Shown here: one piece after another, positions 28,159-35,605 of the stretch
Position numbering within the stretch: the first letter of the stretch is position 1
Layout: every line of letters begins with the position of its first letter
DNA from: Saccostrea cucullata
Lineage: Eukaryota
Direction: 5' to 3'
Assembly (NCBI RefSeq): GCF_032062105.1
Contig: NW_026927899.1
Span: 186,001-250,000 of the forward strand
Length of the DNA: 64,000 nt
Program-made: the position numbers and the translations under genes
The notes under the pieces: model-generated
Told to the model about the DNA's origin: nothing
Seen by the model: only the letters and a program-made list of their open reading frames with translations
Database searches by the model: none

Positions 28159-31100
28159 TTAAGTCCCACAGCTGGCGGTTAATAAGGCATTTCCTGCATA
28201 ACCATGTCCGTCATTTTTGCGTTGACCTGTAACAATGAAACCAAACCGAGACCCATCAGAAGTTTTAACATCAATTACTCCAAATGGAACACTTACAGTA
28301 CAAACACTGTAAAGGTCTGTCCCAACCAGGACGGAAGAGTGAAAAAGGCACTTGTAAATGTTCATGTTTGTTCCATTAATTTGCAGACTTCTCAGAGAAT
28401 CGTTTCTTATCATGAAAGTAGCGAAATTAAAAGTAAACCCATCAGGAACAACATTGATGTATTCGTTGAGATACTGATTTATTCCGGGAATGGTTACCAT
28501 GAACGGATCGCCGTATATATTAGTCTTAGTTGAAGCGAGTGCAATACTGTTAACCAATATAGGTTCGGTGGAATACACAACACCTACTTCATGTTCACGG
28601 ATGATGAAATCAGCAAATCTATCTTTCAGAAGGAGTCCTGTCGTTTTCATGTCTTTTGTAGTAAATTTTATTTTGGTTTTGACAGCTGATAAAATGCGTA
28701 CCTGCGATTGATACCTATGAATGTTTGGTGGTACAATAAAAACATAATCGAGTTTATCAGCTGGGGGAACCATTTCCATAAGCATGCTGCAGTACCCAAG
28801 ATACCCAACAGCTAAACACCTATTCCCCGCAAAGACCGCGACAGGATTTGAAGAACGAATCATTGTACCAGTCATGTCTGCTTTAAGTCCGATTTGAAAT
28901 GTTTGATACTTGTTCAATATGACGTTAAATGTATCCCCGCTCCCATAAGATTTCCCTTGTAGCACTATATCTATGTCATGATCAGCTTTAAACACTATGC
29001 TTACGATCGTATTGTCTTTCATTGCGGCAATAGTAAAATGACTTCCACTCCCAAAGAATTTATCTGTAGGTGTTGCTGTTGATATTATGTAGTCTGTTGA
29101 AAGCTTGTCGATGGGGAAAACTGTTGTGGTATCTGAGGATACATCATGTTTGGTCACGGACAACACAGATGTCCTCACGGAGGTGTTGATAATAATAGCT
29201 TTAGATTCAGTGGTATTGTAAGATGGAACCAGGGAATGGTGTACATCTAGCTTCTTCAGGGTGACATTTCTACTTCTAAGAGTAGATATTGAGATCAAAT
29301 TAGACCTTTGATTCTCTGGCAGTGAAACTATTAAATCGAAGTCGGTCTCTGATGATACGATGATAGTACGGTTAGTTTCGTTTGCCTTGTTGTGGTTTTG
29401 TAGAAAACTGACCAAAAAACTTCGCCCTCTGCTTCCTGCAATAATAATATATTCTGAATACTAAGTTCAAAATTTTAAGATAAAAAAACAAACACCGATA
29501 AAACATTTCTTACCCCACTCTTTTTTCCCTTGATCTATTAATTTCGGATTTTTGCTTTTGCTTCTACAAGGGTTGTTCATAAATTCATCCTTAATCAAGG
29601 GTTGGGATAACTGCTTCATATCTATTTCTTAAAGAAATATGTATTTTTGTGTCAAATGAGTTAAAAAATATAAATGTTCACAAATAGAAAAGAAAAACAT
29701 TACAAGGACAGAAGGAACAGTTAGGTACACAATTACAAGAACCATTTTTGAGTACCAGTAATCTTCATACATGTATTCTAATAGTATTTCATATAGGAAA
29801 AATAAAGCAAGGGACATATGTATAATTTCTCATTTTTATTGTTCAAAAACAAATATCTGATTTGTTCTGAACAAATTGCGAATTCGTACGAACGCTTATC
29901 AAATCCGTTTAAACTAATATCTAATTTGTCCGAAGGAAAATCCATTTCAAATCAATATCCAGAAAATATTTGTCTGAACGAAGATTTAGTTTTCTAATGT
30001 CTTGTTCGTCCTTACAAAAATCTTATTCCTACAAACAAATATGGCTCTCAAGCAGCGACGTATCTTTTAAGGTTGTTTGAAAATCAAAGTCAAAGAATGC
30101 CTTTGATGCACTTATTGAATTTTGTAATCTTCACATGCAAATGGGAATGACTCTATCTTATAATCATTCGAACTTTTTAAATAAATAATCTCATTGACAA
30201 AAGTAACATGATTCAACGGGATGTCTAAGGACCAAAACATTCACTTAGGTGATCTTGTTTTTAGAATATCCTTTATACTATTAATACTAGTTCCAGAGAA
30301 AAAAAAACATATGGAGATCTACTTTTAGCTCAAAGGGGGCAAAATTTCATCATATTAGAATCCACACAACATTGGGAATATCAGTTTAATCAAAGTGGCT
30401 TTGATGTGCTAAAGAAAAAAAAACATGAACAATTACGCCTATATTTTTTTTAAACGCAGCCGATATTTAGCCCAATTATGTTTCATTGCTTATAATTAAA
30501 AGCATACTTGAATTCAATGGATGTTTGCATACCAGGTTAATTTAGTTCTGTACTGCTATGTCATTCACTTAAGTAAATGATTTCGTAACCGCAATATTTT
30601 ATACCTTTCAGTTTACGTGTTTCAAGACCAAATAATACACCAATCGTGGTAAGCCCGCAGATAAGAATGATGATAAGGAGAACCACCAAGAAGGCTTTCA
30701 ATCTTCTTTTAGATGCAATGGGATGATTCACATCTAAGCAGTCGCTGATTTGCTCTATATTACCTGTTTCAGTAGTCTGCATCCTCAGCTTTAAGTATAA
30801 TAGGTACTTATGGATGAAAAGTAAGGATAAAAATCTCTTTCTAATAAAATGGAAAATAAAAAAAGTCGTTTTATATAAATCAGTTTTTTAAGAAAGGATT
30901 TTACCTCTTCATATCCCCCCTGATCTTCAAAATCCTTAAAAAACATGAAAAGAAAGAGTCTTTAAATACAAAATCCAATTGAAATACATCATATGACAAA
31001 GTATATACAGTACCCCAGTAGTAGTTACATGTATGTAAAGCTCATTTATGAAGAGTACACGAATAGAAACAATTTGAAATAATAATTATTGAAGGAAGAA

Positions 31101-34100: not shown

Positions 34101-35605
34101 GTTTTGGCCCAACCCCTAAGGCCCCAGGGGGGCGGGGACCATAACATTCAGAATATTTGTTCCTCTTCACCCATAGATGCTGTATACCAAATTTGGTTGA
34201 AAATGGTTAAGTGGTTTCAGAGAAGAAGCTGAAAATGTTAAAATGTTAACACACGACGGACGACGCACGACGACGGACGAAAACGGATAGCAATAGGTCA
34301 CCTGAGTTTACTCAGGTGACCTAAAAATACCTTGATAACCAGCCCTCTTATCTGAAATTAATAATTGATTTTACGAATATTAAACGGCCAAAACACAATT
34401 AACAATTATGCTTCCTGCACCGATCTAGATAATAACAAATTTTCAAATATGAATATAGAAATAAAAACTTGTATCATGACCATCAAAACTGTTTCAAGAA
34501 CAAATAATAAAATATAAATGTCGGGAAAATTATGACTCTCGAATGAATTTCACAAATACTATTATAACCTCCATTATACTGAAATGTTGACTTAAGATCG
34601 TCTTGATTTTCTGTCTTAAGGTCAAGATCTAGTAAAAGAAAAGTGTATACACTATTTCTTAAATTTGAAAAATAAATTTCTTTGGTGATTCTTAATAATT
34701 TTCAAAGGCGTTGAAACCGGAGGGGGCTATGGGGGCCTAACCCTCCATTTTTTTATACTTACATTATATTTGCATTATACAGGTGTATAGGTATTGAGAA
34801 TTGTGGTTTACCGTTTTTTTTGCTTTAGCCCCCCCCCCACTTTTAATTACACCCCCCGCTTTCAATTTGTTTCCGGTGACTATGATTTTAGTTCACACTG
34901 TGTTTTGGTGCCTAGTTTGTAGGTAAACAAGAGGAATGTTTATATTCCTGACTGTCAATTCCAATGAAAATGTAAGAAAACCAGTCATGAGGGGTTTTTT
35001 TTATATCAGATAAAGAAAATGTTTCATCCAAATTGCCTATATAAAGTTTTTCAGAAAACGTTCATTTATGTGTTTTATGCTTCTTTCTTTAAAATTATAT
35101 TAATTTGAATATATACGGATCGGGATTACTTTTAAAATTATTTCAATAAAAATTCTCTTTTTTCAACCTGATTCTAATGGAGTCGTAGATTTCGGGAAAA
35201 GGAAAGTTAAAATTGATTAAGACGTGATAATGAAGAAAGCACCAAAAAGTTAGCATAGAATCATTTTAATTGATATTGATTTAAAATGAAATCAAATAAT
35301 CATGAAAGCATAACTGTCACATTTACAAAAAAAAAAATAAGGAAATCTAAATTATCAAACATTTTGAATACTCTTTAATGCATACATGAATCTTGCAAAA
35401 ACAAAAGAGCGTTTGATGAAGCATGGGATGATTTGTTTAAACTAGCAAACTAAAAACACTGAAAGTATTTGAATGATAAAGTGTTACTGACTAAATTTGA
35501 TTATTTTTATTTTATGAGAAAAAAGATAAAATATTTCCTTACATAGTTCAGGAAATTATCTTTCTTTCTTTTGAGCTCCTGTTTATTCAGTCTATGCAAA
35601 TTCAT
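28159..35605 (-). CDS. Gene A: type II membrane protein with cytoplasmic YxxL motif and C-terminal IgGFc-binding domain (~555 aa). Coding exons 35543-35605 (tentative), 30905-30934, 30605-30788, 29514-29627, 28159-29435
   Basis: All introns GT-AG with matching phases (0,0,1,1). TM segment AFLVVLLIIILICGLTTIGVLFGL preceded by KRRLK. Last exon has IgGFc_binding motifs GSRGRSFLVSFLQN, DMTGTMIRSSNPVAVFAGNRC, LMEMVPP, GDPFMVTIPGINQY, GYAG. Exon structure is mirrored by paralog C. The first coding exon is less certain. Confidence 0.85.
31376..32781 (-). mobile_element. Non-autonomous Helentron-like (HINE/CvA-pearl type) element with ~166-bp tandem repeats
   Basis: Inverted, diverged copy of 33080-34325: terminal hairpin aggtcatctgagtaaactcagg, (cgt) microsatellite, satellite core, end ...gtgaccaataaggtcaatgggtttcttgtt. 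Confidence 0.8.
33080..34325 (+). mobile_element. Non-autonomous Helentron-like (HINE/CvA-pearl type) element with ~166-bp tandem repeats
   Basis: 5' aacaagaggcccacaggccttataggtcacctgag; tandem units gggccatgaaattcacaa; (gac)n microsatellite; 3' hairpin aggtcacctgagt-tt-actcaggtgacct. Confidence 0.85.

What the first reader, a model, noticed from the sequence alone, without database searches (positions are those of the whole stretch)
28159..35605. Type II membrane receptor: hemITAM-like tail, TM, Cys stalk and IgGFc-binding ectodomain
Seen: spliced model ...DFEDQGGYEE|LRMQ...KRRLK-TM-...NNPCR...-IgGFc-binding domain at the C-terminus, no signal peptide, basic residues N-terminal to the TM (type II topology). 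All three paralogs keep acidic residues followed by YxxL (FEDQGGYEEL, GDDHRYEEL, EDDVPYGKL) although the rest of the tail diverges; paralog C has a further NEYMEP. Established: the IgGFc_binding domain is best known at the N-terminus of secreted FCGBP, and vertebrate type II receptors Dectin-1 and CLEC-2 signal through a single DEDGYxxL hemITAM and Syk. Inference: a possibly undescribed family of invertebrate signalling or endocytic receptors using IgGFc-binding domains as sensors, with the conserved stalk Cys allowing dimerisation. The motif could instead be an AP-2 YxxPhi sorting signal.
Basis: partly seen in the sequence, partly recalled or inferred. Interest (0 to 1): 0.75.

Follow-up and report, generated by a model that had tools for sequence, protein, structure and literature searches.

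The report
Oyster membrane receptor with hemITAM-like tail
An expressed oyster gene encodes a cell-surface protein whose short inner tail carries a tyrosine motif of the kind immune receptors use to signal; mussel relatives keep the same motif in doubled form, hinting at an undescribed family of invertebrate receptors.

Summary
Transcript-like contigs from 4 runs of 4 studies join first coding exon, 30-nt micro-exon, TM exon and stalk exon at the predicted GT..AG sites.

The protein has a 62-aa charged tail, one hydrophobic segment (residues 63-86), a one-Cys stalk and a C-terminal PF17517 ectodomain (E 2.6e-42).

The other two window copies are broken. Genome-wide, only 2 of 12 related copies show no lesion. 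The Tyr codon is kept in 11 of 12. The Leu codon is kept in 11 of 12, with three synonymous codons.

New here: mussel relatives carry the collinear motif DDH[KR]YDDL preceded by YEEI eight residues upstream. That matches the ITAM pattern in 11 Mytilus proteins. The oyster motif is therefore the equivalent of the distal ITAM half.

A tandem-SH2 tyrosine-kinase locus exists in this genome. Oyster hemITAM-to-Syk signalling is published for C-type lectin receptors.

Signalling, topology and dimerisation remain untested, and AP-2 sorting is not excluded. I rate it a new variant of a known kind. An earlier scan note records secreted IgGFc-domain genes elsewhere in this genome.

The parts
35543..35605 (-). 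First coding exon (M1-Y21, MNLHRLNKQELKRKKDNFLNY). ATG at 35605-35603, donor GT at 35542-35541. A likely acceptor at 35621-35622 suggests an upstream 5'UTR exon.
   Evidence: tblastn of P0001; joint to 35543 in 4 of 4 runs; sequence read
30905..30934 (-). 30-nt phase-0 micro-exon encoding DFEDQGGYEE. Tyr29 codon TAT lies at 30913-30911.
   Evidence: Flanked by AG and GT; joints 30933|35543 and 30905|30788 in 4 of 4 runs; homologous micro-exon in 11 of 13 own-genome loci scanned
30605..30788 (-). TM exon. Its first codon CTG (30788-30786) is the Leu of YEEL. It continues with the rest of the tail, the basic KRRLK cluster and the hydrophobic segment (residues 63-86, at 30695-30624).
   Evidence: joints at both ends in 4 of 4 runs
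29514..29627 (-). Stalk exon (EIDMKQ...NNPCR...KKEW) with the single stalk Cys113.
   Evidence: the 5' joint 30605|29627 is seen in 4 of 4 runs; the 3' joint is from NCBI's model only
28159..29435 (-). Large last exon with stop codon: IgGFc_binding ectodomain (PF17517, residues 232-533 of 555), seven N-x-S/T sequons and five of the six extracellular Cys.
   Evidence: Pfam E 2.6e-42 and 5.7e-42; sequons and Cys; AlphaFold2 model with mean pLDDT 92.5, all-beta
58628..61397 (+). Broken paralog. Micro-exon 58628-58651 (GDDHRYEE), TM exon 58771-58942, stalk exon 59948-60046, large exon 60129-61397. The large exon has in-frame stops at 60503-60505 and 61335-61337 and a frameshift near 60862.
   Evidence: one search also reports stops; NCBI models it as the 228-aa P0030
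21372..21687 (-). Relic copy. Micro-exon 21687-21664 (EDDVPYGK) and TM exon 21543-21372. The acceptor before the Leu codon reads AT, not AG, and no stalk or ectodomain exon was found in the window.

Best explanation
The locus is an expressed gene for a single-pass type II membrane glycoprotein. A 62-residue charged tail faces the cytosol. A signal-anchor helix spans the membrane. Outside sit a short stalk with one Cys and a roughly 420-residue all-beta IgGFc_binding ectodomain that acts as the ligand-binding part; its ligand is unknown.

The tail's acidic YEEL is encoded by a dedicated 30-nt micro-exon plus the first codon of the next exon. It is a conserved phosphotyrosine docking site of hemITAM type, and it is the equivalent of the membrane-proximal half of the ITAM-pattern motif in mussel relatives.

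Inferred mechanism: ligand-driven clustering brings tails together. A Src-family kinase phosphorylates Tyr29. A tandem-SH2 Syk-family kinase, or a Src-type SH2 protein, docks and starts a haemocyte or epithelial response.

Shown here: the gene model, the splicing, the domain, the hydrophobic segment, conservation of the motif, and a tandem-SH2 kinase locus in the genome.
Inferred: topology, phosphorylation, the docking partner, the ligand and the cell type.
For: Gene model and expression:
- The model is identical to NCBI's P0001.
- Spliced contigs from 4 of 4 runs include the micro-exon and the TM exon.
- PF17517 sits at the C-terminus.

Topology:
- One hydrophobic segment starts at residue 59-63, after a hydrophilic tail with no N-terminal signal.
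- All 7 N-glycosylation sequons lie C-terminal of it.

Conservation within the own genome:
- The Tyr codon is kept in 11 of 12 aligned copies.
- The Leu codon is kept in 11 of 12, as CTG, CTT or CTA.
- The introns around the micro-exon are hardly alignable between subgroups.
- All four departures from Y-E-[EQ]-L lie in copies with other lesions.

Conservation between orders:
- BLASTP of the oyster protein P0030 against the mussel protein P0205 starts exactly at DDHRYEEL/DDHRYDDL and runs collinearly through the TM segment and stalk (E 0.001).
- In 14 aligned tails, Tyr, an acidic Y+1 and L/I at Y+3 are each 14 of 14.
- 11 Mytilus proteins match Y-x-x-[LI]-x(6-12)-Y-x-x-[LI]. The variants YEQL...YDVI and YEQL...YDEI keep the pattern.

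Machinery and precedent:
- A locus with two SH2 domains followed by Tyr-kinase exons, all on one strand, lies at G000:C6143, about 88-110.5 kb.
- Oyster hemITAM receptors that signal through Syk-ERK to IL-17 are published (passages in PMC12842671 and PMC13027682).
- An acidic stretch before the hemITAM in Dectin-1 and neck-Cys dimers in CLEC9A are described in PMC11624271 (passages).
Against: - There is no experimental datum on phosphorylation, SH2 binding, localisation or ligand.
- The motif also fits the YxxPhi sorting pattern.
- In gene A only two acidic residues precede the Tyr (E at -5, D at -4), not a DED triad.
- The ectodomain is not a C-type lectin-like domain.
- In the more distant type II members the pattern is loose. 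8 of 11 tails inspected hold some Y-x-x-[LIVMF], and 3 hold none (P0026, P0054, P0167). A pattern this loose is expected often by chance.
- Most copies of the close subfamily are decaying (10 of 12 have a lesion or are incomplete), so part of the conservation reflects recent duplication.
- Some copies may be haplotigs of one another, so they are not independent.
- The RNA evidence comes from assembled contigs of a close relative or allele. It says nothing about tissue, expression level or micro-exon skipping.
- The tandem-SH2 kinase locus was not shown to be one gene or an orthologue of Syk.
Confidence: 0.45

Rival explanations
1. It is an endocytic or sorting receptor. The acidic YEEL is a YxxPhi signal read by the AP-2 mu2 subunit (or other adaptor complexes), so the protein carries bound material into endosomes without kinase signalling.
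For: The motif fits Y-x-x-Phi and lies 33 residues from the membrane. Type II endocytic lectin receptors with tyrosine signals are well known (recalled). CLEC9A uses its hemITAM mainly to route cargo (passage in PMC11624271), so the two functions can overlap.
Against: Acidic residues at Y+1 and Y+2, kept in 14 of 14 and 11 of 14 tails, are more typical of SH2 ligands than of mu2 ligands (recalled). Mussel relatives keep two Y-x-x-[LI] units at ITAM spacing in 11 proteins, including variant forms. A single sorting signal does not require that.
Confidence: 0.3
2. It is a membrane-anchored precursor or tether of a mucus or adhesive protein. The signal anchor only delivers the IgGFc_binding domain to the surface, where it is shed or holds mucus, and the tail motif has no signalling role.
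For: In the papers found, mollusc 'IgGFc-binding proteins' are treated as secreted mucus or adhesive components (PMC6337334 passages). The genome holds at least 92 matches to this exon, and many family members lack a TM segment. An earlier scan note records secreted stand-alone IgGFc-domain genes in this genome.
Against: This does not explain why the tail motif is kept from oysters to mussels while most of the tail diverges. It also does not explain the ITAM-pattern doubling in Mytilus. No shedding site was identified.
Confidence: 0.17
3. The model is an annotation artefact or a decaying gene like its neighbours, and the motif is a relic.
For: 10 of 12 close copies carry lesions or are incomplete.
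Against: All five coding exons of gene A are open with canonical splice sites. Spliced contigs with exactly these joints occur in 4 of 4 runs.
Confidence: 0.03

Closest known systems
Vertebrate hemITAM receptors (Dectin-1/CLEC7A, CLEC-2, CLEC9A)
   Same: Type II single-pass layout, a short N-terminal tail with one YxxL preceded by acidic residues, and a stalk that can hold a dimerising Cys (passages in PMC5932189 and PMC11624271).
   Different: The ectodomain is IgGFc_binding (PF17517), not a C-type lectin-like domain. The acidic stretch of gene A is not DEDG. Syk coupling is not shown. There is no sequence homology.
Oyster hemITAM lectin receptors CgCLec-HTM and CgCLec-TM1 (Crassostrea gigas)
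   Same: Bivalve membrane receptors with a single tail tyrosine motif, reported to bind Syk and drive ERK and IL-17 (review passages in PMC12842671 and PMC13027682). They show that the pathway exists in oysters.
   Different: Those have C-type lectin ectodomains, and CgCLec-HTM has its TM segment at the C-terminus. I did not see their sequences or the primary papers.
Vertebrate FCGBP (IgG Fc-binding protein of mucus)
   Same: Shares the domain family PF17517.
   Different: Here the domain is C-terminal, alone, and membrane-anchored. Pfam found no other domain.
ITAM-bearing immunoreceptor chains (FcR gamma, DAP12; Drosophila Draper with Shark, recalled)
   Same: The Mytilus relatives match the ITAM pattern Y-x-x-[LI]-x(7-8)-Y-x-x-[LI]. 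The oyster motif aligns with its second half.
   Different: Gene A has only one such unit. The motif sits in the ligand-binding chain itself, at the N-terminus of a type II protein.
Type II endocytic receptors with YxxPhi signals (asialoglycoprotein receptor, transferrin receptor; recalled)
   Same: N-terminal cytosolic tail with a tyrosine signal and a type II anchor.
   Different: They are unrelated in sequence and ectodomain. The acidic Y+1/Y+2 and the ITAM-type doubling in mussels are not features of those signals.

Membership tests
IgGFc_binding domain family (Pfam PF17517) | Match to the Pfam profile above its gathering score (25.6 bits) over most of the profile | tested here: met
   145.5 bits, E 2.6e-42, profile positions 1-296 of 297; 144.4 bits for the full protein P0001
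hemITAM receptors | A single Y-x-x-L/I in the cytoplasmic tail | tested here: met
   The tail has two Tyr (Y21, Y29) and only Y29 is followed by L at +3. The same holds for P0016 and P0030.
hemITAM receptors | An acidic (tri-acidic, DEDG-type) stretch just before the Tyr | tested here: inconclusive
   Gene A has E-D-Q-G-G before Y (two acidic residues, Gly at -1). Sister copies have DED directly before Y (L007, L008, L012) or EDD-x-x (L002, L005, L006; L003 has GDD-x-x). P0015 has D-N-D-G before Y.
hemITAM receptors | Type II topology (N-terminus in the cytosol) | tested here: inconclusive
   One hydrophobic segment follows a 62-aa hydrophilic tail. The N-side flank has 4 K/R and 1 D/E; the C-side flank has 4 K/R and 3 D/E. 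All sequons lie on the C-side. No topology predictor or experiment was available.
hemITAM receptors | C-type lectin-like ectodomain | tested here: not met
   Pfam finds only PF17517 in P0001. Two relatives (P0006, P0008) add a C-terminal Lectin_C domain.
hemITAM receptors | Tyr phosphorylation and recruitment of Syk through its tandem SH2 domains | not testable with these tools
   Only the presence of a locus with two SH2 domains plus Tyr-kinase exons in this genome was shown.
ITAM | Two Y-x-x-L/I units 6-12 residues apart in a cytoplasmic tail | tested here: not met
   Gene A, P0016 and P0030 have one unit. The pattern is met in 11 Mytilus relatives: 10 of the 11 that have a tail plus TM segment, and P0219, which lacks the TM segment.
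YxxPhi (AP-2 mu2) sorting signals | Y-x-x-bulky hydrophobic residue in a cytosolic tail, at least about 7 residues from the membrane | tested here: met
   YEEL at residues 29-32; the TM segment starts at 63. Binding to mu2 is not testable here.
FCGBP-type secreted mucus proteins | Signal peptide, N-terminal IgGFc_binding domain, vWD/TIL repeats | tested here: not met
   There is no N-terminal hydrophobic stretch, the domain is C-terminal, and Pfam finds no other domain.

The most novel reading that the evidence does not exclude
Pteriomorph bivalves have an old, undescribed family of type II immunoreceptors that pair an IgGFc_binding ectodomain with an ITAM (mussels) or half-ITAM (rock oysters) in the same chain. 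These receptors signal through a Syk-family tandem-SH2 kinase. In oysters the docking tyrosine sits on its own in-frame 30-nt micro-exon, so splicing could switch signalling on or off. Relatives that add a C-type lectin domain (P0006, P0008), and a C. gigas type II fibrinogen-domain protein with an ITAM-pattern tail (P0174), suggest a wider class: modular type II ITAM receptors with interchangeable sensor domains.
Probability: 0.35. Interest if true: 0.8.

Novelty: new variant of a known kind. Interest (0 to 1): 0.62.

Why it matters
ITAM and hemITAM signalling is the backbone of vertebrate immunoreceptor function. Outside vertebrates only a few receptors that use it are known, and in bivalves those described are C-type lectins.

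A family conserved between oysters and mussels, with a different and functionally unknown sensor domain, would do three things:
- It would widen the known repertoire of invertebrate activating receptors.
- It would give the large 'IgGFc-binding protein-like' expansions of mollusc genomes a testable cellular role beyond mucus.
- It would offer a simple system (one chain, one or two tyrosines, one micro-exon) for studying how such motifs arise, halve and decay in a birth-and-death gene family.

It also bears on oyster and mussel disease biology in aquaculture.

Tried and rejected
- Third window copy: tblastn with P0001 and nine relatives found no ectodomain exon near the 21-kb relic.
- Profile word search with alignment A2: it returned only 22 proteins, mostly already known or bacterial. 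It did not even recover P0015 or P0039, so it gave no family census.
- Solved structures: there was no sequence match in the PDB. Foldseek gave only weak multi-sandwich resemblances (TM-score 0.16 or less). VIA-align's best was Z 8.1 over 105 residues, which the tool's own note places within the usual background. I therefore name no fold relative.
- Looking for Syk: the SH2 scan gave 54 matches. Three loci with paired SH2 hits looked, by recalled motifs only, like SHP-2-, PLC-gamma- and RasGAP-type genes, and I set them aside. Two further SH2-plus-kinase loci on C12537 had one SH2 each. Only C6143 showed two SH2 domains plus kinase exons.
- A chance match: I rejected this for the micro-exon because of the RNA joints and the collinear mussel motif. 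I kept 'loose YxxPhi by chance' as a caveat for the distant members P0006, P0008, P0039 and P0136.
- ITIM: I rejected it because position Y-2 is G, Q or H, not I/V/L/S (the ITIM rule is recalled).
- A cleaved signal peptide: I rejected it because 62 hydrophilic residues precede the hydrophobic segment.
- Papers, ten searches. No paper held both 'IgGFc-binding' and 'ITAM' (0 papers). None of those listed for IgGFc-binding + oyster (18), + transmembrane + mollusc (9), PF17517 (1), FcGBP + bivalve + transmembrane (2), ITAM + Mytilus (5) or IgGFc-binding protein + mussel + hemocytes (4) describes a membrane-anchored form, judging by titles and abstracts and by the passages I read in PMC6337334. 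PMC1997429 is not held. I did not ask for supplementary files; gene lists in supplements of transcriptome papers may mention these genes.
- Not done: dN/dS, a coiled-coil prediction for the Mytilus stalk, and a fold of the full-length protein.

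
Full report
WHAT IS THERE. The window comes from Saccostrea cucullata. The large minus-strand ORF at 28159-29415 is 100% identical to part of NCBI's 555-aa 'IgGFc-binding protein-like' protein P0001. That protein maps back to five coding exons (with splice sites read):
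- 35605-35543 (M1-Y21);
- 30934-30905 (DFEDQGGYEE);
- 30788-30605 (L32 to K92: the rest of the tail, KRRLK, and the hydrophobic segment);
- 29627-29514 (the stalk, with NNPCR);
- 29435-28159 (the ectodomain and the stop codon).
All junctions are AG/GT. The large exon matches Pfam PF17517 (IgGFc_binding) at E 2.6e-42 over profile positions 1-296 of 297. Pfam finds nothing else in the full protein. A strong acceptor immediately upstream of the ATG (35621-35622) suggests that the 5'UTR lies in a further upstream exon, which I did not locate.

IS IT TRANSCRIBED AND SPLICED THAT WAY? The look-up of sequencing runs listed 19 runs from 8 studies that hold about 0.4 of the large exon's words. I laid four of them (X12, on record as RNA; X1, X9 and X6, guessed RNA; four different studies) on 29590-35589.
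- In each run one contig of 1776-2440 nt shows the same three joints: 35543|30933, 30905|30788 and 30605|29627. The last two are flanked by GT..AG on the minus strand. For the first, the call lists the ends of the skipped stretch as CC..AC (GT at the donor end on the minus strand), because the aligner cut one base inside the micro-exon; the AG acceptor before it at 30936-30935 is read from the window sequence.
- So transcripts join the first coding exon, the micro-exon, the TM exon and the stalk exon as predicted.
- Limits: these are assembled contigs, which drop rare isoforms. They differ from the window at 9 of 184 letters in the TM exon and at the first base of the micro-exon (this would change Asp22). 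They therefore come from a close relative or a divergent allele. Of the five substitutions listed, two change residues, one in the tail and one at the edge of the hydrophobic segment.
- The stalk-to-large-exon joint lay outside the stretch. Depth, tissue and strand cannot be read from contigs.

THE PROTEIN.
- A hydropathy scan finds one hydrophobic segment (residues 59-88; core 63-86) and none at the N-terminus. With 62 hydrophilic residues before it, it cannot be a cleaved signal peptide and must act as a signal anchor.
- The flank on the N-side has 4 K/R and 1 D/E. The C-side flank has 4 K/R and 3 D/E.
- All seven N-x-S/T sequons and six Cys (113, 337, 346, 493, 509, 553) lie C-terminal of the segment.
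- This fits type II topology, but I had no topology predictor and no experiment.
- Because the extracellular Cys count is even, and the C-terminal Cys recurs in relatives, the stalk Cys may pair within the chain as easily as between chains.

THE ECTODOMAIN. AlphaFold2 on a 44-sequence alignment gives a confident all-beta model (mean pLDDT 92.5, pTM 0.92). It looks like about four sandwich-type modules. No solved structure matches by sequence, by Foldseek (TM-score 0.16 or less) or convincingly by VIA-align (best Z 8.1 over 105 residues). The domain's ligand in an animal without IgG is unknown.

THE OTHER COPIES IN THE WINDOW.
- The + strand copy at 58628-61397 has the same four-exon layout, with GDDHRYEE|L. 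Its large exon carries in-frame stops at 60503-60505 and 61335-61337 and a frameshift near 60862. NCBI models it as the 228-aa P0030.
- The minus-strand relic at 21372-21687 keeps EDDVPYGK and a TM exon. The acceptor before its Leu codon reads AT, and no stalk or ectodomain exon was found.
- NEYMEP (57751-57768) lies upstream of the + strand copy and is not in NCBI's model of it.

GENOME-WIDE CENSUS.
- The TM exon finds 14 places in the assembly. I scanned 13 of them for a micro-exon (L013 was left out: E 0.4, with a stop) and found a homologous one in 11.
- I aligned 12 (L001-L012; L013 and L014 were left out as too weak). The Tyr codon TAT is present in 11 of 12, and the micro-exon is gone in L010.
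- The first codon of the TM exon is Leu in 11 of 12: CTG once, CTT eight times and CTA twice. It is GTA in L012.
- The donor GT is kept in 11 of 11 micro-exons. The acceptor AG is kept in 10 of 11 (CG in L005).
- The flanking intron is alignable only within subgroups.
- Y+1 and Y+2 read EE or EQ in 8 of 11. The exceptions (VE in L004, GK in L011, DQ followed by Val in L012), like the lost micro-exon of L010, all lie in copies with other lesions.
- Lesions by copy: L002, a stop at the stalk Cys codon; L003, stops and a frameshift; L004, stops; L005, micro-exon acceptor lost and large exon not found; L007 (= P0016), a frameshift; L008, a frame break in the stalk exon; L009, stops; L010 and L011, fragments; L012, a 1-nt deletion.
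- Only gene A and the C19151 copy (L006/L016; EDDVQYEE|L) show no lesion in the exons I located, which makes 2 of 12.
- The assembly has 23,869 contigs and 1.17 Gb, so some copies may be haplotigs and some frameshifts may be assembly errors.
- The large exon itself has at least 92 matches in the genome, so this is a big birth-and-death family.

THE WIDER FAMILY.
- phmmer of P0001 against 1.84 billion representatives found 3624 proteins at E up to 0.001.
- Among the proteins then on file, ten have a hydrophilic tail followed by one N-proximal hydrophobic segment: P0001, P0006, P0008, P0015, P0016, P0026, P0030, P0039 (Magallana gigas), and P0054 and P0136 (Mytilus).
- Counting P0167 as well, 8 of 11 tails hold some Y-x-x-[LIVMF] and 3 hold none (P0026, P0054, P0167). 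That pattern is too loose to mean much.
- P0015 (36% identical ectodomain, same exon layout) has D-N-D-G-Y-L-T-I on a small exon just before its TM exon.
- The decisive result came from the Mytilus relatives (the query plus 24 hits). Of the 11 with a tail plus TM segment, 10 begin MAE(I/L)..Q.YE(E/Q)(I/L)-x(7-8)-Y-D-x-(L/I). P0219 has the motif but lacks the TM segment. P0054 has a different, shorter N-terminus.
- All 11 proteins with the motif match the ITAM pattern Y-x-x-[LI]-x(6-12)-Y-x-x-[LI]. The two divergent members (P0208, P0212) change many tail residues yet keep both units.
- The same pattern matched 4 other proteins of the 220 on file. Three matches lie in non-tail contexts (P0003, P0148, P0207). 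One lies in the tail of a C. gigas type II fibrinogen-domain protein (P0174).
- The second Mytilus unit, (E/D)DDH(K/R)YDDL, is nearly the same as the oyster micro-exon product (EDDHRYEE|L in L002 and L005, GDDHRYEE|L in L003).
- BLASTP of P0030 against P0205 starts exactly there and runs collinearly through the TM segment and stalk into the domain (E 0.001).
- In a 14-sequence tail alignment (3 Saccostrea, 11 Mytilus), Tyr is invariant, Y+1 is acidic in 14 of 14 and Y+3 is L or I in 14 of 14. The only other fully conserved positions are Met1 and a juxtamembrane Lys, each in all 13 sequences that have a residue there.
- Saccostrea (order Ostreida) and Mytilus (order Mytilida) belong to different orders of Pteriomorphia.
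The oyster motif is best read as the retained distal half of an ITAM-pattern motif.

CAN IT SIGNAL?
- Reviews report two Crassostrea gigas C-type lectin receptors with a hemITAM that bind Syk and act through ERK on IL-17 and TNF. I saw passages only, in PMC12842671 and PMC13027682, and not the primary papers.
- In this genome, C6143 carries on one strand, in order, exons matching SH2 positions 1-18 and 18-66, a second SH2 (positions 11-53), and four Tyr-kinase exons with HRDLAARN and DFG. That is the Syk/ZAP-70/Shark architecture. I did not show that they form one gene or that it is the Syk orthologue.
- Acidic residues after the Tyr (YEEI, YEEL) are, from memory, the preferred ligands of Src-family SH2 domains. 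That again points to phosphotyrosine docking.
- The Mytilus stalks also contain a heptad-like stretch and an EGF-like Cys pattern (by eye), which would suit an oligomeric receptor. I did not test this.

MOST LIKELY MECHANISM AND RIVALS.
- I commit to a type II surface receptor whose IgGFc_binding ectodomain binds an unknown ligand, and whose tail Tyr29, once phosphorylated after clustering, docks an SH2 protein, most likely the tandem-SH2 kinase (confidence 0.45).
- The main rival is a purely endocytic YxxPhi signal (0.30). The two are not exclusive, as CLEC9A shows (PMC11624271 passage).
- A membrane-tethered or shed mucus or adhesive component with an irrelevant tail is possible (0.17). That is how the literature I found treats mollusc 'IgGFc-binding proteins' (PMC6337334 passages).
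- An artefact or dead gene is unlikely (0.03).

NOVELTY. The gene is annotated, so its existence is not new, and hemITAM-Syk signalling in oysters is published. I found nothing in the searchable library on membrane-anchored IgGFc_binding proteins or on their ITAM or hemITAM-type tails. I did not see supplements or subscription journals. I class it as a new variant of a known kind: an ITAM/hemITAM receptor design with a new sensor domain, conserved between oysters and mussels.

Noticed in passing
window 11899-17215 (+): A run of four long ORFs (202, 369, 628 and 318 aa) with reverse-transcriptase-like and tyrosine-recombinase-like products. It looks like an intact tyrosine-recombinase retrotransposon. 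An earlier scan note calls it a Ngaro element.
   Followed up: no
window 31366-34333: The 4.6-kb intron between the first coding exon and the micro-exon is filled with nested inverted and direct repeats (arms of 0.8-0.96 kb, 72-76% alike). Contig depth there reaches 1e3 to 7e5 in all four runs, so it belongs to a very high-copy repeat family.
   Followed up: partly
window 28005-28074: A 70-nt near-perfect palindrome (94%) lies 85 nt downstream of the gene's stop codon. It could be a 3'UTR hairpin or a small inverted-repeat element.
   Followed up: no
window 35650-35769 and 44901-45021: A 121-nt stretch just upstream of the first coding exon recurs at 90% identity on the other strand about 9 kb away.
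   Followed up: no
P0006 and P0008 (Saccostrea cucullata proteins, other contigs): Two relatives combine the tail, the TM segment and the IgGFc_binding domain with a C-terminal C-type lectin domain (Lectin_C E 4.8e-12 and 2.5e-11). Their tails hold YDVM and YIHM.
   Followed up: partly
G000:C6143, about 88000-110500 (-); loci L029-L031: Exons for two SH2 domains followed by a tyrosine-kinase domain, in order on one strand. This is a Syk/ZAP-70/Shark-type architecture in the oyster genome.
   Followed up: partly
P0174 (Crassostrea gigas, 'microfibril-associated glycoprotein 4-like isoform X20'): A type II protein with a fibrinogen-type ectodomain whose cytoplasmic tail also fits the ITAM pattern (YTVI, seven residues, YDTI). 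It is a single sequence, so chance is not excluded.
   Followed up: no
P0039 / P0170 (Magallana gigas type II IgGFc_binding proteins): The tail holds PPAYDSL, which resembles a PPxY motif (PPxY recalled), and in P0039 a second YDSL 22 residues on. This is a different tail design from the Saccostrea and Mytilus one.
   Followed up: no
G000:C10036:257289-257477 (-), about 7 kb beyond the window's end: A tyrosine/serine-threonine kinase exon match (E 1.7e-13) lies on the same contig just outside the window.
   Followed up: no
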